Shown here in pieces: positions 5,860 to 63,571 of a stretch of 64,000 bases of DNA. The notes under the pieces were generated by a model. That model did no database searches. It saw only the letters and a list, made by a program, of their open reading frames with translations, and had not been told where the DNA came from. Positions within the stretch are counted from its first letter, which is position 1. The number at the start of each line of letters is the position of its first letter. Made by a program: the position numbers and the translations under genes. This DNA is from Raja brachyura (taxonomy: Eukaryota). The stretch spans positions 19,840,001 through 19,904,000 of the forward strand of contig OY740804.1 of the NCBI GenBank assembly GCA_963514005.1, written 5' to 3'.

Positions 5860-7521
5860 AGCGGGTGACCTGCCATTTTCCCATATTGTACTCCATCTGC
5901 CATGTCCTTGCCCATTCACTTGTCCTGTCTATATCCTCACAGAACCTCCTTCATCCTCCCATCGCCTGTGCTACCCGCCATCCAAGATACTGACGTCTCT
6001 CAACCTTGCCTTTAGAACCTGTGGATGTAACCCAAGCTCCCTCTACTGCTTTACAATGCTTGATGCTCACCGTTCATTGCCTAGTCCCTGTCTGGTTTCA
6101 CCTCCCCAGATGCATCAGCTCACACTGAACCTCAAAATAATGGAGGGTACGGGTCACTGTCTCGTTCAGGGGAGTGTCCTGGGCCCAATCATTTTCAGCT
6201 GCATCATCAATGCCCTTCCATCCCAAGGTCAGAAGTGAGGATGATCATTGATTGCACAATGTTCAGTTCCATTCATAACTCATCAGCTAGTGAACAGCCC
6301 GTGTCTGCATGCAGCAGGAGCCAGACAACTGTCCAGGCCTAGAATGCTAACTTTGGGAAAGATGCAAGGGTTCCAGAAAGGATGGGCAAGGGATTTCCCA
6401 ACATGGTTCCACAGATGAGAGGGTTTTAGTTGTGGCAAAGAGGAGGGGAGACGGGAGTAGCTGGGGTTGATCTGTATTGGAGAGGGGACAGGTGCAGGGC
6501 CTTGTGGAGAGGAGAGGCTGAGCGGAAAGGGTGGAACATTGGGACTGGGATAGGCTCCTCGAAAGGACCAGCACAAACTCAGTGGGCTGAATGGCTGCCT
6601 TTCTGCTGGGCGAGTAGAAGGGCAAGCTGACCATATGAAGTTCACAACTTCAGTGGTTGGGAAATTGTCACGACATAAACATTTTGTCAAAACAGTTTTA
6701 AATAGCTCTGGTTATCTGATCGACAGAGTACAGGGCGAGAGTAAGCTAGTGATCACAATCATGCCCCCTTCCTCTGACTTTGCACCAGAGCATAAGTGAG
6801 GCATGTTATCTCCCCAGTCTCAAACTGCTGGTAACAAAGGCACGAGCAGTGGACAAGTACACCACTCACACACTACTAGAACATTGGTGAGACACAGGTT
6901 GAGCTGCCTCATACAGACTGAAAAGGCAGGGACAGAGAATTCTGGATCAGATACATGCCTGTACGCTGTACTATTGTGCTGTGGAATGTGTCAGAATTCA
7001 CTAAATTGTGTGGTCCTATCACCACTGTCTGTGTGGGAACCTGCAGGACATTTTGTAGATGGTGCAGGACACTGCGCACCAATGGTGGAGGGTGGGATGT
7101 TAGGGCAGAGGGAGGAAATATTTTTGAAGACTGATGGAGAGATGTTTTGTCCAAGGTGGTGTCAATCTTCTTGAGTTGATAGAAGTGCACTCACCCAGGC
7201 AAGTGGAAAATGTTCTCTCTCACCTTGAAAAACATCAGATTTTAGGTGTAAGCCCAAAATAAAAAATGGTAATATTGGAGTCAACAACGTGGAAGCTTAT
7301 CCATGCAGCTGACGGGAAAGAGAGTGTAGGAAAGGTCACGTTTAAACTAACAGGACAGGGAGATGTGACCAAATGCAAGGAGACAGAGGGCCATAAAAGG
7401 AGGACAGATACAAAGGGAAGATGGGAGATAAGAAAAATGAACCTGAAAGCTTTGTGCCTCAATGCGAGAAGCATTTCAAATAAGGTGGATGAGATGAATG
7501 CAGTTAGTAGTTAAGGGACAT

Positions 7522-11698: not shown

Positions 11699-12032
11699 CT
11701 TCACCGCAACAGACAGTCTCTCCCAACGAGGCTGTTCCCAATGGACTGCTCCGCTGCTGCCTGCCGTCAATTTGTCCGCCACTAGGAACAGTCACCCAGG
11801 GATACTAACGGGAGAGAAGGGAGGGGTGGGGGGTAGAAGAAGAGAGCGAGGGGGAGAAGGAAAGAGGAGAAAGAATAGGAAATTGAGGGGGAGAGGGGTG
11901 GACAAATGAAACGAGACGGGGTGGGGTGGGTGGGTGGGCGGCTGGTACGAAGACGGGAAGCTACCTGGTACCTCTCATTGGGTCCAACTGTTTTCGACAT
12001 CCTCTGATCCTCACTCACCTCTTTCTCGCCAG

Positions 12033-12124
12033 CTGGACTGCAGGAGCCCGAGATTTGTTACGTTCTGGACGCCGTTCTGTTCCTTTATGGGACAGTGTTA
12101 ACGGTTCTGTACTGCCGTCTGAAG
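12033..12124 (+). CDS. FCER1G: FCER1G exon 2 (short ectodomain and transmembrane helix)
   Basis: ctcgccag|CT GGA...AAG|gtgagt; 92 bp; (A)[30 protein letters not shown] with the dimer Cys and TM Asp typical of FcR gamma. Confidence 0.97.
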
Positions 12125-41812: not shown

Positions 41813-43129
41813 ATGCAGTACAATGTGGATACATGTGAGGTTATCCACTTTGATGGCAAAAACAGGAAAGCAGACTATTATCTGAATGGTGGCCGATTAG
41901 GAAAATGGGAGATGCAACGAGACCTGGGTGTCATGGTACACCAGTCATTGAAAGTAGGCATGCAGGTGCAGCAGGCAGTGAAGAAAGCGAATGGTATGTT
42001 AGCATTCATAGCAAAAGGATTTGAATATAGGAGCAGGGACGTTCTACTGCAGTTGTACAGGGTCTTGGTGAGACCACACCTGGAGTATTGCATACAGTTT
42101 TGGTCTCCAAATCTGAGGAAAGGCATTCTTGCCATAGAGGGAGTACAGAGAAGGTTCACCAGACTGATTCCTGGGATGTCAGGACTTTCATATGAAGAAA
42201 GACTGGATAGACTCAGCTTGTACTCGCTAGAATTTAGAAGATTGAGGGGGGATCTTATAGAAACATACAAAATTCTTAAGGGGTTGGACAGGCTAGATGC
42301 AGGAAGATTGTTCCCGATGTTGGGGAAGTCCAGGACAAGGAGTCACAGTTTAAGGATAAGGGGGAAATTTTTTAGGACCGAGATGAGAAAAACATTTTTC
42401 ACACAGAGAGTGGTGAATCTCTGGAATTCTCTGCCACAGAAGGTAGTTGAGGCCAGTTCGTTGGCTATATTTAAGAGGGAGTTAGATGTGGTCCTTGTGG
42501 CTAAGGGGATATGGCCCTTGTGGCTAAATGGAGAGAAATCTCTGATTTTTCATCGATGTGAAGCGGGGCTCTGAGTGAGGTGGCCAAAAATGACGGCCGT
42601 AAGTGGTGGCACTCTCTCGGAAATCAAATCGCAGTGAGTCCAAAGTGGTCAAGATCTTACTTTTAGTAATATAGATGGTCACTCTTTGCAAACCCAACTT
42701 CCTTACTCGGAACTCTCTCTACTGAAGGCCAGCCCATTTTCAGTCCTTAGTACTGGCCATATGCTTCCTTTGATTTCTTTATTAAAACCCCGATATCTTG
42801 ACATTTAAGGTACCCTGGAGTTGCTGTCCTCACCATTCAACATGATAGAACTTGTTAGCCATGAAATCTCACTATTCACTTTTAAAGGACCCCCACTGGT
42901 CAGATGTAGATATCCCCATGTTCTGTCACTCCTCCTCTCCCAGCAGGATATCTGTATACTGACAAGTGATTCTCAGCCCCTCTGTGGGGAGGATATCTGT
43001 ACACTAACCAGTGTCTCTCAGTTCCTTTCTCTCAGGCAGCGTAAGGAGGGGATGGATCCATCACTCCCGTGTCACTGGGAGCGAGAGGATGGGATTAATC
43101 ACAGAATCTTTCCTGCTCCCCTGTTGCAG

Positions 43130-43291: not shown

Positions 43292-43730
43292 GAAGTATCT
43301 TCAGGCACTGATGGAGAGTGGATCTGACACCCAGTCCCTGAGCCTGTGGGTGGGGGTGTGGGGAGGGGGGAGGGGGTATGTGGGGGTGGGGGAAGGGTAG
43401 GAGTGTGGATGTTGGGGGAACGGAGGGAGGGGCTAGGTGGAGTACTAAGTCAGGAAGGGTTTCAGTGTGGACCCCCTGTTCTCTGCCCCATGGACCCAGC
43501 AGAGACTTTGGATATTTACGTGAAGGGGAAGCAGAATTGTCAAACTGGATCTCAGCCCCAGTGGGGAATTGAATGCAACAGCAGACGCACAATCTCATGG
43601 CGTGCGAAACTGGGGGACTGCACCCCACAATCTCTCAGGATCACCCCCACCAAAGTACCTCAGGACCCACACAGACATTATACAATCCAAGAATATTGGT
43701 TTGTTCCAGTGATCTCAATTCCTTCTCAGA

Positions 43731-45206
43731 CTGGTGAACCTTCTCTGTACTCCCTCTATGGCAAGAATGTCTTTCCTCAGATTTGGAGACCAAAACTATA
43801 CGCAATACTCCAGGTGTGGTCTCACCAGGACCCTGTACAACTGCAGTAGAACCTCCCTGCTCCTATACTCAAATCCTTTTGCTATGAATGCTAACATACC
43901 ATTTGCTTTCTTCACTGCCTGCTGTACCTGCATGCCTACTTTCAATGACTGATGTACCATGACAGATATCAGATACAAGTCTACTTTCCTGTTTTTGCCA
44001 CCAAAGTGGATAACCTCACATTTATCCACATTATACTGCATCTGCCATGCATTTGCCCACTCACCCAGCCTATCCAAGTCACCTTGCAACCTCCTAGCAT
44101 CCTCCTCACAGCTAACACTGCCCCCAGCTTCGTGTCATCCGCAAACCTGGAGATGTTGCATTCAATTCCCTCATCCAAATCAATAATATATATTATAAAT
44201 AGCTGGGGTCCCAGCGCTGAGCCTTGCGGTACCCCACTAGTCACTGCCTGCCATTCTGAAAAGGACCCATTTACTCCTACCCTTTGCTTCCTGTCTGCCA
44301 GCCAGTTCTCTATCAAAATCAATACTGAACCCCCAATACCGTGTGCTTTAAGTTTGTATACTAATCTCTTATGTGGAACCTTGTCGAAAGCCTTCTGAAA
44401 GTCCAGATATAACACATCCACTGGTTCTCCCTTATCCACTCTACTAGTTACATCCTCGAAAAATTCTATAAGTTTCGTCAGACATGATTTACCTTTCGTA
44501 AATCCATGCTGACTTTGTCCAATGATTTCACCACTTTCCAAATGTGCTGCTATCCCATCTTTAATAACTAACTCTAGCAGGTTCCCCACTACCGATGTGA
44601 GACTAACTGGTCTGTAATTCCCTGTTTTCTCTCTCCTTCCCTTTTTTAAAAGTAGGGTTACATTAGCTACCCTCCAATCCTCAGGAACTACTCCAGAATC
44701 TAAAGAGTTTTGAAAAATTATCACTAATGCATCCACTATTTCTGGGGCTACTTCCTTAAGTACTCTGGGATGCAGCCTATCTGGCCCTGGGGATTTATCG
44801 GCCTTTAATCCATTCAATTTACCTAACACCACTTCCTGGCTAACCTGGATTTCACTCAGTTCCTCCATCTCATTTGACCCCCGGTTCCCTGCTATTTCCG
44901 GCAGATTATTTATGTCTTCCTTAGTGAAGACAGAACCAAAGTAGTTATTCAATTGGTCTGCCATGTCCTTGTTCCTCATGATCAATTCACCAGTTTCTGA
45001 CTGCAAGGGACCTGCATTTGTTTTAACTAATCTTTTGCTCTTCACATATCTAAAAAAGCTTTTGCAGTCAGTTTTTATGTTCCCTGCCAGTTTTCTTTCA
45101 TAATATATTTCCCCTTTCCTAATTAAGCCCTTTGTCCTCATCTGCTGGACTCTGAATTTCTCCCAGTCCTCTGGTAGGCTGCTTTTTCTGGCTAATTTGT
45201 ATGCTT
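43731..45206 (-). mobile_element. CR1 LINE ORF2 reverse-transcriptase fragment
   Basis: 386-aa ORF 43981-45141 with [32 protein letters not shown] and FADD; frameshifted near the end. Confidence 0.92.
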
Positions 45207-45219
45207 TCTGTAGGCTAAT

Positions 45220-45600
45220 TTGTGTTCCATGTGTACATGGAATGTGAGACGTGGCAGCCCCTGTTCGACCATCTGAAGGGGCTGCTCCTCACATTTTGGC
45301 TACATTTTAGCCCCACATTCCTGATATTTTGGCACCGGGTACAGAGGTGGGAGGGGAGGGAGGGAGGGGGGGGGGGGGTCTCCCTGTCGGTTTGCTCCTG
45401 GGCCTGGCCAAGATGGGCATTCGCGGGTCCAGGCAGCTGGTAGTCGATGGCCACACCGGGGTCAGTTACCTGCCTGTTTTCCGGGCCTACGTCCGTGCCC
45501 GCGTGTCCCTAGAGAGGGAACGCGGTGTCCAGGGGGACGCTGGAGGCCTTCGCTGCGGGAGGCCGAGTGCATTGCTGATGATGATGACGTTATTGTAAAA
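45220..45600 (+). mobile_element. Tx1-clade LINE ORF2 3' fragment
   Basis: FHVYMEC...PLF..LKGLLL.FWLHFSPT.LIF and LLLGLAKM.I..SR...RARVSLE. Confidence 0.7.
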
Positions 45601-45724
45601 TTGATGACTGTTGCTTTGGAAACTGCCACAAAGGCAGTTTTGATCGTGTTGTCCCCCCTCTCTCTTTCTCAAACTCCACGCCCCTCCCCTATATTTGACC
45701 CCTTCTCTCTCTACCTGACCTCAG

Positions 45725-46300
45725 GAGATTGCCCTTGCCATTGTGGGAAGAGAAGAAGGAGATTGACCAAGGTCTGGCCACCTGCTCAGAGTCCACAGAC
45801 AGCTGGGGAGTGAGACACGCAAGGCTGACCACACAGAGAGCCGAGTCAACAGGGACACAGAGCGAAGCCAACATCAGCACTGGAGGAGGAGATCAGATAA
45901 CAGAACTAAGTCAAGAAATGATTAAACTTCTTCCAAAATGTGGCAGAGTAACCAGAGAGAGAGACACACAAACAAATGAATCATCCCGGGAACATTAACC
46001 CTCACCCACCTCTCCCATCCAGATACAAGGCAGCCCGTTTCCCCATTGGCAGCGCACAGTGGTGATTTCTTTGTGAGTGCAGATGTGTGGGAACCTTCCA
46101 TTCTGAAGAAGAGTCGTGAGGAAAAACATCACCTATCCACGTTCTCCGAAAGTGCTGCCTGCCTCACTAATTTGCTCCAGCATGTTGTCTCTTTTCTTGT
46201 AAACCAGCACCTGCATTTGCCAGTGTCAATGCTCCTTCAGTTGTGATGTCCGCTCGTGTGAAGCCTGGTGTGAGGAACATTCTCTTATGAGTGATCCTCC
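45725..46300 (+). pseudogene. Candidate short cytoplasmic exons (45725-45771, 46023-46072, 46208 onward)
   Basis: Three pyrimidine-tract/CAG acceptors (one with a CACTAAT branch-like site) and donors gtctgg and gtgagt; reading frame unresolved. Confidence 0.35.
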
Positions 46301-46654
46301 ACCTCCAGTTTAAATTCCTTTTGGAATCATTTTGGAGGACCAGGAAACCAAGAATCAGGATTTCAGTGTGTGTGAGGGAACTCATGTTTCCAATCATGTT
46401 ACTCTGTCCGTGTGAACTCAATATAACTTTTGTACATGTGGCATTATTCTGTTCAAAACATTACAATTATTGCAAGAATTTCAGTCGGGTAACAGATAGC
46501 GCAGGGGGTGTGAGCCAAGAGCCGACGCAACTATGGAGACAGCATCTGGCACACAGATCTGCAAGCGGAGGTACATATTGAATCAATTATTCCCTCTGGC
46601 GTGCAGCGACTGATGTATACTTCACAGAACTGGCTCCGCAATGTCCTTACATTG

Positions 46655-47450
46655 TGAGCGGGTTAATCCCCTCTGACAGGGAACTAATGACTGAGTGTGG
46701 GTGGAGGGAGGGGGCGGGAGCATTCATCCTATCTGACAGGGAACATGCTGCCCGGTGTCCTTATGTTACAAGTGGTGAATGAGAGGTTAATCTCCTCTGA
46801 CAGGGAATGGGCTCCTGGGGGGTGGGTGGGGAGAGTGCTCATTCCCTCTGACTGGGAACGGATAACTCGATGTCCATACATGGTGAGCAGTGAGGGAGTG
46901 GGTTAATCCCCTCCAGTGGGGGACGGGTGCCTGGATGTGGGTGAGAGGGTTAATCTCCTCTGAGTGAGAGGGTTAAACCGCTGTGAAAGGTTGTGAGGAG
47001 ATGGGTTGAAAGGGTTAATCTCACCGATAAGGAACGGGCTGCCTGCAGTGGACAGGAAAGAGTTTAACTGATGGGCAGTGGGTGCCAGGGATGTGGGTGG
47101 AGATGGGAGGGTTAATTTCCTCTGGCAGGGAGCCGGCTGCTTGATGTCCTTTAATTTTGAGCTAGTTAAACCTCTCTGGCAGGGAACATGCTGCTGGTGT
47201 CCTTACATAGTGAATGGTGATTGAGAGGATGAATCCCCTCTGAGGCAGCAGTCTGCCTGGGATGTGTGTGGACAGAGGGGGTTAACCCACTTCAATGGGG
47301 ATGTGTTGCTGGGGAGAGAGTTTACACTGAGAGGGAACGGGTGCCCCCCGGGTATGGGTGGGGTGAGGGGGTGAGAGGGTTAATCCACTCTGATGGGGAA
47401 CGGTCTGCCCGGGATGTGGATGGGGAGAGGGTTAACACTGAGAGGGACAG
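46655..47450. repeat. Degenerate repeat array (GAGAGGGTTAATCCCCTCTGACAGGGAAC-like)
   Basis: About 12 diverged copies of a GGTTAA(T/A/C)C core immediately upstream of the ADAMTS exon. Confidence 0.6.
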
Positions 47451-47686
47451 GCTGCCAACTTTGGGAGTTTCTGGCTGCACTCCTTGCTCACGCCTACCTC
47501 CTGGATGGGACGTGTCATCTGGAGCTTGGGCTCGGGACGTCCTGTAAGCAGCCTCCGATTACGGACCAGGGATCCAGCACCGTGCCAGGCTGTGCCAGGC
47601 CGTGCCACGCCACACAGCCCTACCCTGCCCTTTTCACCCTCCACACTCCTGCCCACCCCTGCAGTGGGGAGGCGAGGGTTTTGGGG

Positions 47687-48100
47687 ATGATGTTGGGACG
47701 GTCGCTGGGACTGTGGTGCTTGCTGGTGTTGGGGGCGAGGAGGCAGCCGGGGGCACGAGGGCAGCAGGGGATGGTGGTGGGCACGTCTCGGCTGCGGCGG
47801 GTGGAGCTGCTGGTGGTGGTGGACGTGGGTCTGGCGCACGCCCTGGGTGGGGAGGTGCGCCCCTACGTGCTGGCGCTGCTGGGCGCGGCGGATCGGCTGT
47901 ACAGGCACCCGTCGCTGGGCAGCGCAGTCAGGCTGGTGGTCAGCCGGCTGGAGGTGGTGTGGGACCAGGCCATGGGTCCGCGGGTCGATCCCGACGCCAG
48001 GCAAACTCTGCACGCCTTCTGTCGCTGGCAGCGGGAACGGCGGGCACTGGGAGACTGGGGAGAGGCACCGTACGATGCCGCCTTGCTGCTGACACGAGAG
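47687..48100 (+). CDS. ADAMTS5-like metalloprotease, first coding exon (signal-like N-terminus plus start of catalytic domain)
   Basis: MMLGRSLGLWCLLVLGA...SRLRRVELLVVVD...ADRLYRHPS...FCRWQ...LGD..E..YDAALLLTRE|gtaggg (phase 0). The start codon is inferred; a good acceptor lies at 47664/47665 and the ORF is open from 47393. Confidence 0.85.
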
Positions 48101-48101
48101 G

Positions 48102-49600
48102 TAGGGCACACCCACCAGGGCACACTCACTGGGGCACACTCACCAGGGCACACTCACTGGGGCACACGCACCAGGGCACACTCACTGGGGCACACTCACC
48201 AGGGCACACTCACTGGGGCATGCTCACCAGGGCACACTCACTGGGGCACACCCACCAGGGCACACTCACTGGGGCACACTCACCAGGGCACACTCACTGG
48301 GGCACACCCACCAGGACACACTCACTGGGGCATGCTCACCAGGGCACACTCACTGGGGCACACCCACCAGGGCACACACTGAAGCAAACCCACTGGGACA
48401 CACCCATTGGGTAACACTCACTGGGGCACACCCGCTGGGGCACACTCGCTGGGGCACACTCACTGGGGCACACTCACTGGGGCACACCCACTAGGGCACA
48501 CTCACTGGGGCACACCCACCAGGGCACACTCACTGGGGCACGCCCACCAGGGCACACTCACAGGGGCACGCCCACCAGGGCACACTCACTGGGGCACGCC
48601 CACCAGGGCACACTCACTGGGGCACGCTCACCAGGGCACACTCACTGGGGCACGCCCACCAGGGCACACTCACTGGGGCACGCCCACCAGGGCACACTCA
48701 CTGGGGCACGCCCACCAGGGCACACTCACTGGGGCACGCCCACCAGGGCACACACCGAAGCAAACCCACTGGGACACACCCGTTGGGTAACACTCACCAG
48801 GACACACCTGCTGGGGCACACTCACCAGGGCACACTCACCAGGAAACACTCACTGGGGCACGCTCACCAGGGCACACTCACTGGGGCACGCCCACCAGGG
48901 CACACTCACTGGGGCACGCCCACCAGGGCACACTCACTGGGGCACGCCCACCAGGGCACACTCACTGGGGCACGCTCACCAGGGCACACACCGAAGCAAA
49001 CCCACTGGGACACACCCGCTGGGTAAAACTCATCGGGGCACACCCGCTGGGGCACACTCAGTGACACACTGACAGGGACACACTCACTGGTACATGCATC
49101 AGGGCACACTCATGGGGAACCACTCACTGGCACAGTGAATAGGTTACACTCCCTGGGGCACACTCACAGGCACACTCACCATGACAAACTCATGGGCGCA
49201 CATGGTTACACTCACCATGACACACCTACTGGGGCACAGTCATGTGCACACTCATCCATGACAAATGCAAGGGCACACTCATAGACACAATTCCCATGAC
49301 ACATTCATGCACAGATTCACCAGGGCACACTCACAGGCACACTCACTAGGGTCTGTGCACTGAGGCTAGGGCACACACATCATGACATTCACCGTAGCAC
49401 ACCCATCAGTGCACCCACAAAGGCACATTCACCAGGGCACACTCGATAGGAACACTTACCTTGGCACACTTACAGTGACACACTCACAGGGCAAACCCAC
49501 AGGAGCACACTTGATGGGCACACTCACTGGGTACATATATCAGGCACACTCACCAGGGCACACTCACAGGGGCACACATCTTGGGTCACTCGCCAACTCA
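48102..49600. repeat. 14-bp-unit minisatellite (GGGCACACTCACCA / GGGGCACACTCACT), decaying 3'
   Basis: Begins within the ADAMTS splice donor; produces His/Thr/Gly-rich spurious ORFs. Confidence 0.92.
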
Positions 49601-50571
49601 GGCTGACTGGGACACATTTGCTGTACTTGCACATCAATGCTTACACTGTGTCAGACTAGTTGTATACACCTGCTGGGTCATACTGCCAACACTCACAAAA
49701 TCACACCTGCAGGAGCACACTCAGTCACATCTGCCAGCGCACACTAGCCGCTCTCAATCCTCTGTACTTAGCATCGCACTCACCTTGTCATAATCTGTGG
49801 CCACACTCGCCACAGTCACATCACTGAGTCACACTCGCTGGACCCACACCCACATTGCTTGCAGCTGCCTGGATCACTCATGCTCACCACTCTTGCTATG
49901 CTCACACTTACCTGGATCAGACAGATGGGACTCACAGTCAATGGTGTGACACTGTGCTCACATTCACAGGATTCACTGCGGCTGCCCAGCTCAGGGTCAC
50001 TTGTCAGATACACACTCACATGGGGTCGAACACACACTCTCTCAATCTCTCCCTCCTTCTCTCTCTATCGATCTCCCTCCTTCTCCCAATCTCTCCCTCC
50101 CTCTCTGTTCTCATTCTCTCTCTCTCTCCCTCCCAACACTTTCTCCCGCTCTTTCTCTCCCCTTTCCCTCTTTAATCCCTCAATTCTCTCTCTCTCGCTT
50201 CCCCCCTCCCTCTCACCCTATAGCTCTCACCTCCCCTCCTTCCCTCTTCCATCCACCCCTCCCTCCCTCTTCCTCCACTCCTCCCTCCCCCTCTCTCCAC
50301 CCCTCCCTCCCTCTCTCCTCTCCTATTTTTGGCAGTAGCTGTTTATTGGGTTCTGCCACATTCCATTGCAAAGGACCGTAAAGCAGCAATAACAAGTCAA
50401 GGAGGCTGTGGAACTGCTGACAAACACAATGTGGTCAGACAGAACCAAAGCTTTCTGAGTTGCCTCTCACAACTCCACAACACAACAATACTGCTTCAGT
50501 AACCACACACACAAACACTGTGACAACAACTCATAAAAATAAGTACAAATACTCCAACATAATCTGTGATC

Positions 50572-50724
50572 ACTGCACCATGGTCCAGGATATTGTCCTT
50601 CAGAGCGCCTTCTCCATCGCTCATGAAATTAGTAATCACTCATGCATGTTTTTAAATCCTTTTTTAGCCTTTACAATGGAGTTTCTTGCAGTCATAATTC
50701 TTTTACCATGGTATTACATTCATC
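50572..50724 (+). pseudogene. Partial, diverged duplicate of the ADAMTS HE-containing exon and adjoining intron
   Basis: Aligns with 51557-51717; encodes CTMVQDIVLQSAFSIAHEI and keeps the gtaatcac donor. Confidence 0.85.
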
Positions 50725-51477: not shown

Positions 51478-51616
51478 AACCTCTGTCAGGAAAACTTCTG
51501 CGAGTCGCTGGGGCTTGGCCACATTGGGACGGTGTGTGAGGTGGACGGTGGTCAGAACTGTGCCGTGGTCCAGGACATCGGCCTTCAGAGCGCCTTCACC
51601 ATCGCTCATGAAATTG
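51478..51616 (+). CDS. ADAMTS5-like exon (catalytic domain, start of zinc motif)
   Basis: cgtcag|AAC...ATT G|gtaat; 139 bp; NLCQENFCESLGLGHIGTVC...CAVVQDIGLQSAFTIAHEI(G). Confidence 0.93.
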
Positions 51617-55643: not shown

Positions 55644-55811
55644 GACATCTCATCGGCATGGCACACGACAACTCGGAGATTTGTGTGCAGATGGGGGAGG
55701 ACTCCTGGGGTCACCAGATGATGTCTCCCATGTTGTCCAGAGTCAACATGGCTGCGCCCTGGTCTCTCTGCAGCGTTCGCTTATCCCTCGGATTCTTTGC
55801 AAGTGGCAGGG
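55644..55811 (+). CDS. ADAMTS5-like exon (zinc motif completion and Met-turn)
   Basis: tcgcag|GA CAT...AGG G|gtgaga; 168 bp; completes HEIGHLIGMAHD, then C...HQMMSP...PWSLCS. Confidence 0.93.
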
Positions 55812-60642: not shown

Positions 60643-60917
60643 GTGACTGCCTCTTGAACGAACCGTCCGTCTCTTTGGCTGAATCCGTCCCTCTTGCCGG
60701 CACGACCTATGACCGGGATATCCAGTGCCGGCTGTCCTTTGGCCCAGGGTTCCGGGCGCGACCGGGCCTGGACCCGTGCCCGGTGCTGTGGTGCTTGGCT
60801 CGGCACCAGGGCGAGTGGCAGCACGTCAGCAAGCAGTTGCCGGCAGCGGACGGGACGCCGTGTGGTGGGGCAGCCGTCTGCCTCCGCGGCAAGTGCACCT
60901 CCAACTGGCAACAACTG
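60643..60917 (+). CDS. ADAMTS5-like exon (end of catalytic domain plus disintegrin-like domain)
   Basis: cgcacag|GT GAC TGC...CTG|gtacgt; 275 bp; DCLLNEP...YD...QC.L.FGP...LWC...LPAADGTPCG...CLRGKC. Confidence 0.92.
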
Positions 60918-61021: not shown

Positions 61022-61208
61022 ACTCCGGTAAACGGGAGCTGGGGTCCGTGGGGCCCGTGGAGATCCTGCTCTCGTTCATGTGGAGGTGGGGTCCAATACT
61101 CTCGGCGCCGCTGTGACAATCCCACCCCCACCAACTTCGGCCACTTCTGCCTGGGAACGTGGGAGAGGTTCCAATCGTGCAACCTGGAGTCGTGCCCGGA
61201 CGACAACG
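61022..61208 (+). CDS. ADAMTS5-like exon (thrombospondin type 1 repeat)
   Basis: ttccag|ACT...AAC G|gtaggt; 187 bp; [30 protein letters not shown]...C...SCN...CP. Confidence 0.95.
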
Positions 61209-61931: not shown

Positions 61932-62095
61932 GTGGGAGTTTCCGACAGGAGCAGTGCGAGGCGAGGAACGGCCCATCTCCGGAAGGGACGCTGCAGGAGT
62001 GGGAAGCGTACTACCATGGCATCCGCTGGCCAGACCTCTGCAAACTCAACTGCCTGCTGAAGGGCACCGACCTGGTCACAGTCTTCTCCATCAAG
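61932..62095 (+). CDS. ADAMTS5-like exon (cysteine-rich domain)
   Basis: gacag|GT GGG...AAG|gttcgt; 164 bp; GSFRQEQCEARNG...EW...Y.G....DLCKLNC..KGT....VFSIK. Confidence 0.92.
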
Positions 62096-63571
62096 GTTCG
62101 TCCGTCTCCCCTCCCTACCCAACTCATCTCGCCCCCACACTGCCTGTCTGCTCCTCCAGCCCCTGTTCCCCGCAAGGCCGGCCGCTCAAGGAGGGATTCA
62201 CCCTAAACCCCACCTCCCACACCTTGCCCTTGAATAGATTAACACAGGCTCAATGCATACTGTTGAGTTACATCACAGCTTGGTTTGGGAGCAGCTTTGC
62301 CCAAGACCGCAAGATATTGCAAGGGGTTGTGAATGTAGCCCCGTCCATCACACAGAACTGAGTTTCCACCATTCATTCCGTCAATACTGCTTTCGGAAAG
62401 CAGCCAACATAATGAAAGACATCCTACTCCAGTCATTCCTCTCCCTGCGGTAGGTACAGACACACGAACACCTTCTCCCCCACTGTTATCAGGCTTTGCA
62501 ACTGTCCTCCCCTAAGCTAGCGTCCTCTCTGATTCACCTCTGGCCCATCGAAGACATTGGACTTTGTGTATCGAGCTAATGCACGACATTGCTGAGCACT
62601 ACAGTACATTCTTCACTCTGTATCTTCACATTTCCTCTACTCATTATAGTTTTATTTATCTATAGTATTACACGATTTGATTCGCTAGCAAAACAACGCT
62701 TTTCATTGTACCTCGGTACACATGACAGTAATAAATCTAAACCCACGTGGACCAACACGGGGTCAACACAAGGTCAACATTGCTTCAATGTGGCATCAAT
62801 GCAGGGTCAACTTAGGGTCAATCACATTGAGGCCATGACCAAGGAAGCGCACCAATACTTCCACTAAAGTTTAAGAAAAGTTGGCAGATCTCCAATGATT
62901 CTTAACAACATCCACATATGTGCCGTTGTAAGCATCAGGTTACTGAATGGTCCTCCCCTAAATCAGGGCGCAGTGCCGATCTTCCAACCTCCCACATTGC
63001 AGACCTTGCATTTTTTTTAATCTGCACTTTTTCCCTAACTGTAACACTCTAACGCTATATTCGACACTCTGGTATTTTTCTCCTTGCACTACCTGTTTTA
63101 CATGTGCACAGTTTGATTACACTCGTGTATGGTATGCTTTGACTGGAAAGCGTGCAAACAAATCTTCTCACTGAATCCTGCTATACATGACAGTAATAAC
63201 CCAATACCAAATGCAGGGTCAAGGCAAGGTCACTGCACAATCAACATGGGGTCAATGTGGTGTCAACATGGGGTCAATGTGGTGTCAACATGGGGTCAAT
63301 GCAAGTCAAGACAGGGCAGTGTGGCGTCAATGCTGATCCATATTGAGTCAATGACGTCGATGCAGAGCCGACACGGGCTCATTGCACACTCAATGTTCAA
63401 GTTCAAGAGAGTTTATTGTTATGTGTCCCTGACAGGACAATGAAATTCATGCTTTGCTTCAGCACAACAGAACATAGTAGGCATTGACTACAAAATCAGA
63501 TCGGTGTGTTCATATCCTATTATAGGTGTAAATGTGGTGTCAACCGCAGGTCAATGCACGATCAATCCAGT

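What the first reader, a model, noticed from the sequence alone, without database searches (positions are those of the whole stretch)
47665..48100. ADAMTS protease with no recognisable prodomain: signal peptide almost directly fused to the catalytic domain
Seen: ATG 47687 opens MMLGRSLGLWCLLVLGA (basic start, hydrophobic core, small residue). A ~20-aa linker then ends in RLRR (47789-47800), directly before the first catalytic strand VELL, only 38 residues from Met. All later exons are open and in phase, the HExxHxxGxxHD motif and Met-turn are intact, and the eight catalytic-domain cysteines are present. No prodomain-like exon was found between FCER1G and this exon, and the N gaps as given are under 200 bp. 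Known: proteoglycanase ADAMTS enzymes have a ~200-aa latency prodomain removed by furin; from memory, ADAMTS5 encodes signal, prodomain and catalytic start up to ...TRE in one exon. Inference: an in-exon deletion removed the prodomain, giving an enzyme that may be active on secretion or regulated differently. Even the alternative upstream ATG (47393) adds only ~98 residues with no clear prodomain similarity.
Basis: partly seen in the sequence, partly recalled or inferred. Interest (0 to 1): 0.88.

Follow-up and report, generated by a model that had tools for sequence, protein, structure and literature searches.

The report
Skate ADAMTS protease without a propeptide
This skate gene encodes a secreted ADAMTS5-like matrix protease whose signal peptide runs almost straight into the catalytic domain; all rays and skates sampled share this, sharks keep only a stub of the propeptide, and it gives a natural test of what ADAMTS propeptides are for.

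Summary
The ATG at 47687 opens a signal-peptide-like start. Twenty-one residues later the reprolysin catalytic domain begins at VELL. Exon 1 ends at 48100 with a GT donor, and exons 2-6 are intact with canonical splice sites.

No prodomain-like coding sequence was found in the 64 kb, by tblastn with 150 ADAMTS proteins, a custom profile of 174 ADAMTS1/4/5 prodomains, or Pfam. Transcript-like contigs from a near-identical sample run unspliced from 47604 to 47897. They leave the genome exactly at the exon-1 donor, so neither proposed acceptor (47665, 47768) was used in the one transcript contig recovered.

The short N-terminus is conserved in Amblyraja, Mobula and Pristis. Sharks keep a 25-55 residue stub with a Cys-switch-like Cys and a furin site. 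The prodomain was therefore lost in two steps, and the second removed the furin site.

RLRR is not the old furin site. It aligns with SRARQ/SRTRH inside the mature ADAMTS5-type N-terminus.

The gene is a fast-evolving sister of ADAMTS5, not ADAMTS4. Whether the enzyme is active on secretion is untested.

The predicted proteins are already public, but I found no paper describing this. It is a new variant of a known kind.

The parts
47348..47686 (+). Likely 5' UTR and transcription start region. There is no in-frame stop back to 47384, but the reading frame is not conserved among skates.
   Evidence: Transcript-like contigs of run X1 have depth 0 over 46358-47347 and depth 18-25 over 47348-47743. 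Related skates carry indels that are not all multiples of 3: 6 nt behind 47524 and 5 nt behind 47603. The CCGTGCCAGG repeat lies at 47580-47611.
47505..47690 (+). Upstream ORF (MGRVIW..., 61 codons) in another frame. Its TGA stop overlaps the main ATGATG.
   Evidence: In the Amblyraja gene model the same ATG is fused in frame as a 61-residue extension with no signal-peptide core.
47687..47737 (+). Start codon and predicted signal peptide, residues 1-17 (MMLGR, then the hydrophobic core LGLWCLLVL, then GA).
   Evidence: Ten-residue Kyte-Doolittle maximum of 2.4 starting at residue 7, with (-3,-1)-rule sites after residues 16 and 17. The start is homologous in Pristis and Mobula.
47738..47779 (+). 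Lineage-specific linker, residues 18-31 (RRQPGARGQQGMVV). It has no Cys and no furin site at the family position.
   Evidence: It matches no part of the ADAMTS prodomain profile. In the alignment with sharks it falls in the gap left by the deleted stub.
47780..47800 (+). Residues 32-38 (GTSRLRR), the homologue of the mature N-terminus SISRARQ or SISRTRH. RLRR is at 47789-47800.
   Evidence: PDB alignment to mature ADAMTS5; profile positions 234-246; MAFFT alignment.
47801..48100 (+). First half of the reprolysin catalytic domain (VELLVVVD ... LLLTRE). The GT donor is at 48101-48102.
   Evidence: The 2519-nt transcript contig of X1 leaves the genome at 48100.
48104..49179 (.). Satellite of 28-bp (14-bp) units filling the start of intron 1.
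   Evidence: Tandem Repeats Finder: 38.9 copies, 83% matches.
51478..51616 (+). Exon 2: altered S2'-loop (CQENFCESL), VQDIGL, and the first part of the zinc motif (HEIG).
   Evidence: tblastn to the skate orthologues; AG acceptor and GT donor; alignment.
55644..55811 (+). Exon 3: rest of the zinc motif (HLIGMAHD), the Met-turn region, and the end of the catalytic domain.
60643..60917 (+). Exon 4: disintegrin-like domain (ADAMTS_CR_2).
   Evidence: Pfam PF17771, E 7e-16.
61022..61208 (+). Exon 5: central thrombospondin type 1 repeat.
   Evidence: Pfam PF00090, E 1.4e-9.
61932..62099 (+). Exon 6: start of the cysteine-rich domain. No further exon was matched in the window, and the rest of the gene may run past its end.
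   Evidence: tblastn to P0001 and P0151, residues about 455-515 of 873-876; splice sites.

Best explanation
The window holds the 5' two-thirds of an expressed, intact gene for an ADAMTS5-like secreted zinc metalloprotease found only in sharks and rays among the proteins I recovered.

In skates, translation starts at 47687. A 16-17 residue signal peptide is removed on entry to the ER. The protein that emerges already starts about 14 residues before the position where furin-processed ADAMTS5 starts. It has no folded propeptide, no cysteine switch and no convertase site at the family position, so neither folding nor activation can depend on a propeptide.

Shown:
- the anatomy of the gene
- conservation of this short N-terminus in three batoid orders
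- the shorter stub in sharks
- a transcript colinear with the genome across the start

Inferred:
- Signal-peptidase cleavage after residue 16 or 17.
- The prodomain was lost in two steps inside exon 1. About 150 residues went before sharks and rays split. The remaining stub, with its Cys and furin site, went in the batoid stem.
- The enzyme is catalytically competent.
- Control of activity has moved elsewhere: to transcription, to inhibitors, or to the catalytic domain itself.
For: Anatomy.

No prodomain-like sequence in the 64 kb:
- tblastn with 150 ADAMTS proteins gave nothing better than E 0.009, on the wrong strand 41 kb away.
- A profile of 174 ADAMTS1/4/5 prodomains was run against 1964 six-frame pieces. 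Its best hit (E 2.4) is exon 1 itself, at the mature N-terminus.
- Pfam PF01562 is absent from five orthologues but found in alligator ADAMTS4 and a paddlefish ADAMTS5-like control.

Transcript evidence:
- A 295-nt X1 contig is colinear with the genome over 47604-47897.
- A 2519-nt contig stops matching at 48100.
- There is no depth over 46358-47347.
- A DNA contig of X4 is colinear over 45621-48130, which confirms the assembly.

Orthologues: Mobula, Pristis and Amblyraja share the start and the short N-terminus. Four shark species have a signal peptide, a 25-55 residue stub and a furin site before SISRTRHVELL. The stubs align to the Cys-switch-to-furin end of the prodomain profile.

Constraint:
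- The zinc motif and the catalytic cysteines are conserved.
- Identity between sharks, rays and skates is 57-65%, against 77-80% for ADAMTS5 in the same species pairs.

Precedent: ADAMTS13 MDTCS was expressed in S2 cells with a foreign (BiP) signal peptide fused directly to the protease domain and then purified (PMC6706451). Its 41-residue propeptide is not needed for secretion or function (PMC4885070).
Against: - The RNA status of run X1 is a guess by the index. I infer it from the contig ending exactly at the donor.
- X1 contigs do not cover 47546-47603, so a splice further upstream cannot be ruled out from reads alone.
- The main frame has no stop between 47384 and 47687.
- Orthologue proteins are automatic gene models. 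One skate model is flagged LOW QUALITY, and two skate models start at an upstream ATG.
- ADAMTS1, 4 and 5 need propeptide excision for activity. ADAMTS9 and ADAMTS17 need the propeptide as a chaperone (PMC5296908). Folding without one is therefore not a given for this clade.
- No protein-level or activity data exist.
Confidence: 0.8

Rival explanations
1. In skates, RLRR (residues 35-38) is a working convertase site. Residues 18-38 would then act as a 21-residue micro-propeptide, removed in the Golgi to leave a mature enzyme starting at VELL.
For: R-L-R-R fits the R-X-K/R-R convertase consensus (established knowledge). It is present in all three skate sequences.
Against: - It aligns with SRARQ, SRTRH and SRTRQ, which are not convertase sites and lie inside the mature enzyme of ADAMTS5, sharks, Mobula and Pristis.
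- Two of its three Arg are family-conserved, so one His/Gln-to-Arg change creates the motif.
- Cleavage would remove the 7 conserved N-terminal residues and expose the first beta-strand, which starts at residue 31 of the Pristis model.
- The segment has no Cys to block the zinc.
Confidence: 0.12
2. The short N-terminus is an artefact. A 5' exon encoding a signal peptide and prodomain exists but is hidden in an N gap, lies outside the window, or was missed by the gene models.
For: - There are three N gaps upstream.
- A good acceptor-like site (pyrimidine tract plus CAG) ends at 47664.
- The frame is open back to 47384.
Against: - The gaps are 129-188 bases as written, and the nearest is 7.8 kb upstream.
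- The transcript contig crosses 47665 and 47768 unspliced.
- Frame-shifting indels among skates lie in 47520-47610.
- FCER1G lies upstream on the same strand.
- Independent models in Mobula (two species) and Pristis start at the same Met. Four shark species have their own N-terminal signal peptides on short stubs.
- No prodomain signal appears in any frame of the window.
Confidence: 0.05
3. The gene is decaying or has become a non-proteolytic ADAMTS-like protein. Loss of the prodomain would then be part of relaxed constraint.
For: - The stem branch is very long, 1.1 substitutions per site.
- The gene evolves about twice as fast as ADAMTS5.
- Residues invariant in ADAMTS1/4/5 are replaced around the S2'-loop calcium site, and one disintegrin-domain cysteine pair is lost.
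Against: - The open reading frames are intact and the splice sites canonical in the window, and full-length models exist in about ten elasmobranch species.
- HExxHxxGxxHD, the Met-turn region and all eight catalytic cysteines are kept.
- The clade-specific replacements are themselves invariant within the clade.
- A 2.5-kb spliced transcript contig with depth 73 was found.
Confidence: 0.04

Closest known systems
ADAMTS5 (aggrecanase-2)
   Same: - It is the sister group in the tree, with SH-aLRT 98, and gives the best PDB sequence match.
- From my memory of the ADAMTS5 gene, not checked here, exon 1 likewise runs from the signal peptide to ...TRE.
- The mature N-terminal motif is the same: S-x-S-R-x-R-x-VELL.
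- Domain order is the same, including a C-terminal TSR in the full-length orthologues.
   Different: - ADAMTS5 has a prodomain of about 220 residues with a Cys switch and an RRRR/RSKR furin site, including in sharks and skates, which keep a separate true ADAMTS5.
- The gene here has none.
- Its S2'-loop and calcium-site residues are changed.
- It evolves about twice as fast.
ADAMTS13
   Same: It is the one family member known to have a very short propeptide: 41 residues, no Cys switch, no latency, and not needed for secretion or activity (PMC6706451; PMC4885070).
   Different: - ADAMTS13 still has a propeptide and a furin site.
- It is a distant paralogue (E 0.004).
- Its latency is explained by a gatekeeper triad that is specific to it.
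Bird ADAMTS4
   Same: The prodomain has been cut down independently. Seven bird models whose N-termini I read, from palaeognaths to neoavians, have a signal peptide plus a stub of about 30-50 residues, and the other listed bird models (about 25) are similarly short at mostly 640-700 residues. PF01562 was not found in the one bird model tested.
   Different: - Birds keep the GPxCPV Cys-switch segment and the RRAKR furin site. In that they resemble the shark stubs, not the batoid state.
- It is a different orthogroup.
ADAMTS4 (the name NCBI gives the Amblyraja model)
   Same: Its genomic neighbourhood includes FCER1G. It belongs to the same proteoglycanase subfamily.
   Different: - The gene here does not group with ADAMTS4 in the tree.
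- Its orthologues carry a C-terminal TSR, which ADAMTS4 lacks (PMC4349717).

Membership tests
ADAMTS family (M12B reprolysin with thrombospondin repeats) | N-terminal signal peptide | tested here: met
   Hydrophobic core at residues 6-16 and (-3,-1) sites after residues 16 and 17. This is a heuristic only; SignalP was not available.
ADAMTS family (M12B reprolysin with thrombospondin repeats) | Propeptide of about 200 residues (Pfam PF01562) with a Cys switch, ending in a convertase site | tested here: not met
   There is no PF01562 in five orthologues, although both positive controls hit. No prodomain-profile or tblastn hit was found in the window. Residues 18-38 contain no Cys, and there is no R-x-x-R at the family position.
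ADAMTS family (M12B reprolysin with thrombospondin repeats) | Reprolysin catalytic domain with HExxHxxGxxHD, a Met-turn and eight cysteines | tested here: met
   The exons were tested one by one. The spliced protein of the window was not joined or searched.
ADAMTS family (M12B reprolysin with thrombospondin repeats) | Disintegrin-like domain and central TSR, followed by a Cys-rich domain and a spacer | tested here: met
   PF17771 and PF00090 were found on window exons 4 and 5. The Cys-rich domain and spacer were seen only in the orthologues P0151-P0155. No exon beyond exon 6, the start of the Cys-rich domain, was matched in the window.
ADAMTS5 orthogroup | Falls inside the ADAMTS5 clade, and is the only such gene in the species | tested here: not met
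   It is sister to the ADAMTS5 clade, not inside it. Amblyraja, Mobula and Scyliorhinus each also have a true ADAMTS5 with a long prodomain.
ADAMTS4 orthogroup | Groups with tetrapod, coelacanth and lungfish ADAMTS4, and has no C-terminal TSR | tested here: not met
   The tree separates it from ADAMTS4, whose clade has support 100. The orthologues have a C-terminal TSP1_ADAMTS domain. Only the FCER1G neighbourhood fits.
ADAMTS13-type short non-inhibitory propeptide | A short propeptide that is still excised at a furin site | tested here: not met
   The shark orthologues fit this pattern. The skate, Pristis and Mobula proteins have no furin site at the family position.

The most novel reading that the evidence does not exclude
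Loss of the propeptide was made tolerable by building latency into the catalytic domain.

In ADAMTS4, calcium bound by Asp320 and Glu349 holds the S2'-loop (consensus CGxxxCDTL) open. Without calcium the loop folds into the cleft and a carboxylate blocks the zinc (PMC4885070).

In every member of the elasmobranch clade, and in window exon 2, the two ligands are Asn and Gln and the loop reads CQExxCESL (CLExxCESL in Carcharodon). This could favour the closed, self-inhibited state until a substrate or cofactor opens it. A similar argument has been made for ADAMTS13 and its non-inhibitory propeptide (PMC6706451).
Probability: 0.15. Interest if true: 0.75.

Novelty: new variant of a known kind. 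Interest (0 to 1): 0.55.

Why it matters
A structural review states that all M12B proteinases carry a pro domain next to the signal sequence, with ADAMTS13's 41 residues as the short exception (PMC4885070). In ADAMTS1, 4 and 5, furin excision of the propeptide is the activation step (PMC5296908).

A proteoglycanase-type ADAMTS that has done without any propeptide across three batoid orders gives a graded natural series:
- the shark orthologues, with a Cys-plus-furin stub;
- the true ADAMTS5 in the same animals, with a full prodomain;
- the batoid gene, with none.

This series can be used to ask three questions. What is the propeptide needed for: folding, latency or trafficking? What changes in the catalytic domain compensate for its loss? 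Can prodomain-free aggrecanases be produced? The independent truncation of bird ADAMTS4 suggests the propeptide is more dispensable in this subfamily than usually assumed.

Tried and rejected
- **Upstream ATG 47393 as the start.** Rejected. It lies in a degenerate repeat, the N-terminus it gives has no signal-peptide core, and the frame upstream of about 47610 is not conserved among skates.
- **Weak tblastn hits.** The hits were at 6606-6508 (-), 7012-7125 (+) and 13174-13028 (-). Rejected as chance: they are 12-35 residues long, lie on inconsistent strands and in inconsistent order, one contains a stop codon, and E is at least 0.009 before correcting for 150 queries.
- **Shark stub as a relic of the ADAMTS4 Cys switch.** I first read it that way. 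The tree shows the clade is sister to ADAMTS5, so the comparison should be with the ADAMTS5-type prodomain. The profile alignment to the Cys-switch-to-furin segment still holds.
- **The look-up of encoding contigs.** I had no orthologue DNA, no dN/dS and no check of in-frame stops upstream of the Mobula and Pristis starts.
- **AlphaFold2 model of the Pristis orthologue** (25-row alignment). Mean pLDDT was 57.7 and pTM 0.38. Residues 1-30 are unstructured and the first strand is at 31-39, but the S2'-loop and the second half of the catalytic domain fall below pLDDT 50. The model is useless for the active site, and I ran no fold search.
- **Literature searches** for ADAMTS prodomain loss in elasmobranchs or cartilaginous fish found nothing. 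The main ADAMTS evolution paper contains no occurrence of 'shark', 'chicken' or 'prodomain' in a term search (PMC4349717).
- **Joined spliced protein of the window.** It was never built or searched.
- **N gaps** were left as they are.

Full report
**What is there**

On the + strand, ATG 47687 opens MMLGRSLGLWCLLVLGA. Then come 14 residues with no relatives (RRQPGARGQQGMVV), then GTSRLRR, then VELLVVVD. The exon-1 coding part is 47687-48100 (138 codons, ending TRE), with a GT donor at 48101-48102.

A sequence search of solved structures aligns residues 32-137 with the very first residues of the mature catalytic domains of ADAMTS5, ADAMTS1 and ADAMTS4 (E 3e-19 to 2e-16). Pfam Reprolysin starts at residue 39.

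Exons 2-6 lie at 51478-51616, 55644-55811, 60643-60917, 61022-61208 and 61932-62099. All have AG/GT boundaries in matching phases. They carry:
- the zinc motif HEIG|HLIGMAHD, split over exons 2 and 3
- the Met-turn region and the eight catalytic cysteines
- a disintegrin-like domain (PF17771, E 7e-16) and a TSR (PF00090, E 1.4e-9)

These points rest. No exon beyond exon 6 was matched in the window, so the rest of the gene may lie past its end. I searched the exons one at a time by reference. The joined protein of the window was not built or searched.

**Is a prodomain hidden somewhere?**

Three searches found nothing.
- tblastn of 150 ADAMTS proteins against the window gave only short chance matches upstream of 47.6 kb. 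The best was E 0.009, on the opposite strand 41 kb away.
- I built a profile from 174 full-length ADAMTS1/4/5 prodomains and ran it, with all HMMER filters off, against all 1964 six-frame pieces of at least 20 residues. The best hit (E 2.4) is exon 1 itself, at profile positions 234-246, which is the mature N-terminus.
- Pfam PF01562 is absent at E up to 1 from the skate, Mobula, Pristis, Chiloscyllium and Scyliorhinus orthologues. It is found in both positive controls, alligator ADAMTS4 (1.4e-8) and a paddlefish ADAMTS5-like protein (9.8e-7).

The three N runs are 130, 129 and 188 bases, and the nearest is 7.8 kb upstream. I left them as they are. The region 46650-47450 is a degenerate tandem repeat. 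An FCER1G-type transmembrane exon sits at 12008-12148 on the + strand.

**Transcript evidence**

One run (X1) comes from a different coded organism but differs at only 2 of 294 laid bases. It holds a 2519-nt contig whose first 189 nt lie on 47912-48100 and which then leaves the genome exactly at the GT donor. A second contig of 295 nt is colinear with 47604-47897.

The first contig behaves as a spliced mRNA, so I take X1 to be RNA, although the index only guesses so. X1 depth is zero over 46358-47347 and positive from the 47348-47545 bin onward, which puts the transcription start at roughly 47.35-47.6 kb. A DNA contig of the 100%-identical run X4 is colinear over 45621-48130, so the assembly here is sound.

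The limits are that only contigs were laid, X1 does not cover 47546-47603, and only one reads call was allowed.

**The region upstream of the ATG is not coding**

The main frame is open back to 47384. However, related skates differ from the window by a 6-nt insertion behind 47524 and a 5-nt insertion behind 47603, inside a CCGTGCCAGG repeat.

The RefSeq models of Amblyraja radiata (P0001) and a second skate (P0151, flagged LOW QUALITY) start at an ATG (MGRVIW...). In the window that ATG is at 47505, in another frame, and ends at a TGA that overlaps the main ATG. That N-terminus, and the one starting at 47393, lack any signal-peptide-like hydrophobic core. The N-terminus starting at 47687 has one, with (-3,-1)-rule sites after residues 16 and 17.

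**Orthologues**

A full-library HMMER search with exon 1 (results collected) and a word-index search, with names, recover a clade found only in elasmobranchs.
- Mobula (two species) starts MMSGGLLGLSCLLVVGV QEGLPSEQW VSRTRHVELL.
- Pristis starts MISGRLLGLSCLLVVGA RGGSPGERW LSRTRQVELL.
- The skates are as in the window.
- Four shark genera (Chiloscyllium, Scyliorhinus, Mustelus, Carcharodon) have a signal peptide and then 25-55 residues. That stub contains a conserved R/H-C-Q/A-A/V-G and ends in RRGR, RKGR, RQAR or RRSR, directly before S-I/V-S-x-T-R-H-VELL.

The prodomain profile aligns the Scyliorhinus and Mustelus stubs to positions 196-246 (Cys switch to furin site), Carcharodon and Chiloscyllium only from position 219 (furin-site end), and the batoid N-termini only to positions 230-246. 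The signal peptides of sharks and batoids align with each other.

The simplest history has two deletions inside the ADAMTS5-type first exon. The first happened before sharks and batoids split and left a stub. The second happened in the batoid stem and removed the stub's Cys and the furin site.

**RLRR**

The motif aligns with SRARQ of mature human ADAMTS5 and with SRTRH/SRTRQ of sharks, Mobula and Pristis. Two of its three arginines are family-conserved, and one substitution makes the motif. It is therefore not the relic of the activation site, which lies 7 residues upstream, where skates have GMVV. It could still be cleaved in skates, but that would expose the first beta-strand. I give this 0.12.

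**What gene is it?**

I built a maximum-likelihood tree from 33 sequences covering the catalytic domain through the spacer, using the quick IQ-TREE search with SH-aLRT support.
- The elasmobranch clade is monophyletic (support 100).
- It is sister to ADAMTS5 (98) and apart from ADAMTS4 (100) and ADAMTS1.
- Its stem branch is 1.1 substitutions per site.

The same species also have a true ADAMTS5, and the Scyliorhinus one shows the full ~220-residue prodomain and furin site. Identity between skate, Mobula and catshark is 57-65% for this gene, against 77-80% for ADAMTS5. The gene is faster-evolving but clearly constrained.

With a branch this long the placement should be treated with care.

**How it most likely works**

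Signal peptidase alone would yield the mature enzyme, with about 14 extra residues before the usual N-terminus. There is no cysteine to cap the zinc and no convertase step.

Folding without a propeptide has a precedent in ADAMTS13. Its 41-residue propeptide confers no latency and is not needed for secretion or function, and its MDTCS fragment was expressed with a foreign signal peptide fused directly to the protease domain (PMC6706451; PMC4885070). By contrast, ADAMTS1, 4 and 5 need propeptide excision for activity, and ADAMTS9 and ADAMTS17 use the propeptide as a chaperone (PMC5296908). The batoid state is therefore unusual for this subfamily.

**A lead on compensation**

At positions invariant in ADAMTS1/4/5, the clade has its own invariant residues around the S2'-loop calcium switch described for ADAMTS4.
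- The loop consensus CGxxxCDTL reads CQExxCESL (CLExxCESL in Carcharodon).
- The calcium ligand Glu349 is Gln.
- Asp320 is Asn, which is also the case in elasmobranch ADAMTS5.
- MADVG is LGHIG or LAHIG.

In ADAMTS4 the calcium-free state is closed and self-inhibited. I rate a built-in latency of this kind at 0.15. The AlphaFold2 model was too poor to test it.

**Novelty**

The predicted proteins are in public databases under ADAMTS4 or ADAMTS5-like names. I found no paper that notes the missing prodomain. Earlier notes of this scan on this window (s1-881323, s1-881376) concern the gene's identity and a neighbouring pseudogene, not the prodomain. I class the finding as a new variant of a known kind.

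**Not done**

SignalP was not available. There are no raw-read 5' ends.

Noticed in passing
not in the window; proteins P0041, P0296-P0328: Bird ADAMTS4 models are mostly about 640-700 residues, across roughly 30 models from palaeognaths, Galloanserae and Neoaves. The seven whose N-termini I read have a signal peptide followed by a 30-50 residue stub that keeps the GPxCPV Cys-switch segment and the RRAKR furin site. Turtles, alligator, lizards, mammals, amphibians, coelacanth and lungfish have the prodomain of about 200 residues, and PF01562 is on record for most of them (not for several mammal models). This is an independent truncation of an ADAMTS prodomain.
   Followed up: partly
window 51478-51616 (exon 2) and alignment A1: The S2'-loop and its calcium site are remodelled in the whole elasmobranch clade. 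CGxxxCDTL becomes CQExxCESL (CLExxCESL in Carcharodon), the Glu349 equivalent becomes Gln, the Asp320 equivalent becomes Asn, MADVG becomes LGHIG, and IEDDGL becomes VQDIGL (site as described in PMC4885070).
   Followed up: partly
window 60643-60917 (exon 4) and alignment A1, Pristis positions 274 and 295: Two cysteines of the disintegrin-like domain that are invariant in ADAMTS1/4/5 are both replaced in the clade, by R/Q and by H. This looks like the coordinated loss of one disulfide.
   Followed up: no
window 47505-47690: A 61-codon upstream ORF has a TGA stop that overlaps the main ATGATG. In Amblyraja, indels fuse it in frame to the main ORF. It may regulate translation by termination-reinitiation or leaky scanning.
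   Followed up: partly
window 50570-50680: A partial copy of the 3' half of exon 2 plus the first bases of intron 2 sits inside intron 1. It spans about 110 nt and is roughly 85% identical over that core (80% mean column identity over the whole 163-column alignment), and its GT is kept. It looks like a pseudo-exon from a small segmental duplication.
   Followed up: partly
window 48104-49179 and 46650-47450: Exon 1 is flanked by repeats. Downstream is a 1.1-kb satellite of 28-bp (14-bp) units that starts 3 bases after the donor. Upstream is a degenerate repeat of units like gggttaatcccctctgacagggaac.
   Followed up: no
window 42200-42600 and 43600-45400: Contig depths here are enormous in all four runs laid, from four different coded organisms, with many variant letters. 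These are high-copy interspersed repeats upstream of the gene.
   Followed up: no
   Followed up: partly
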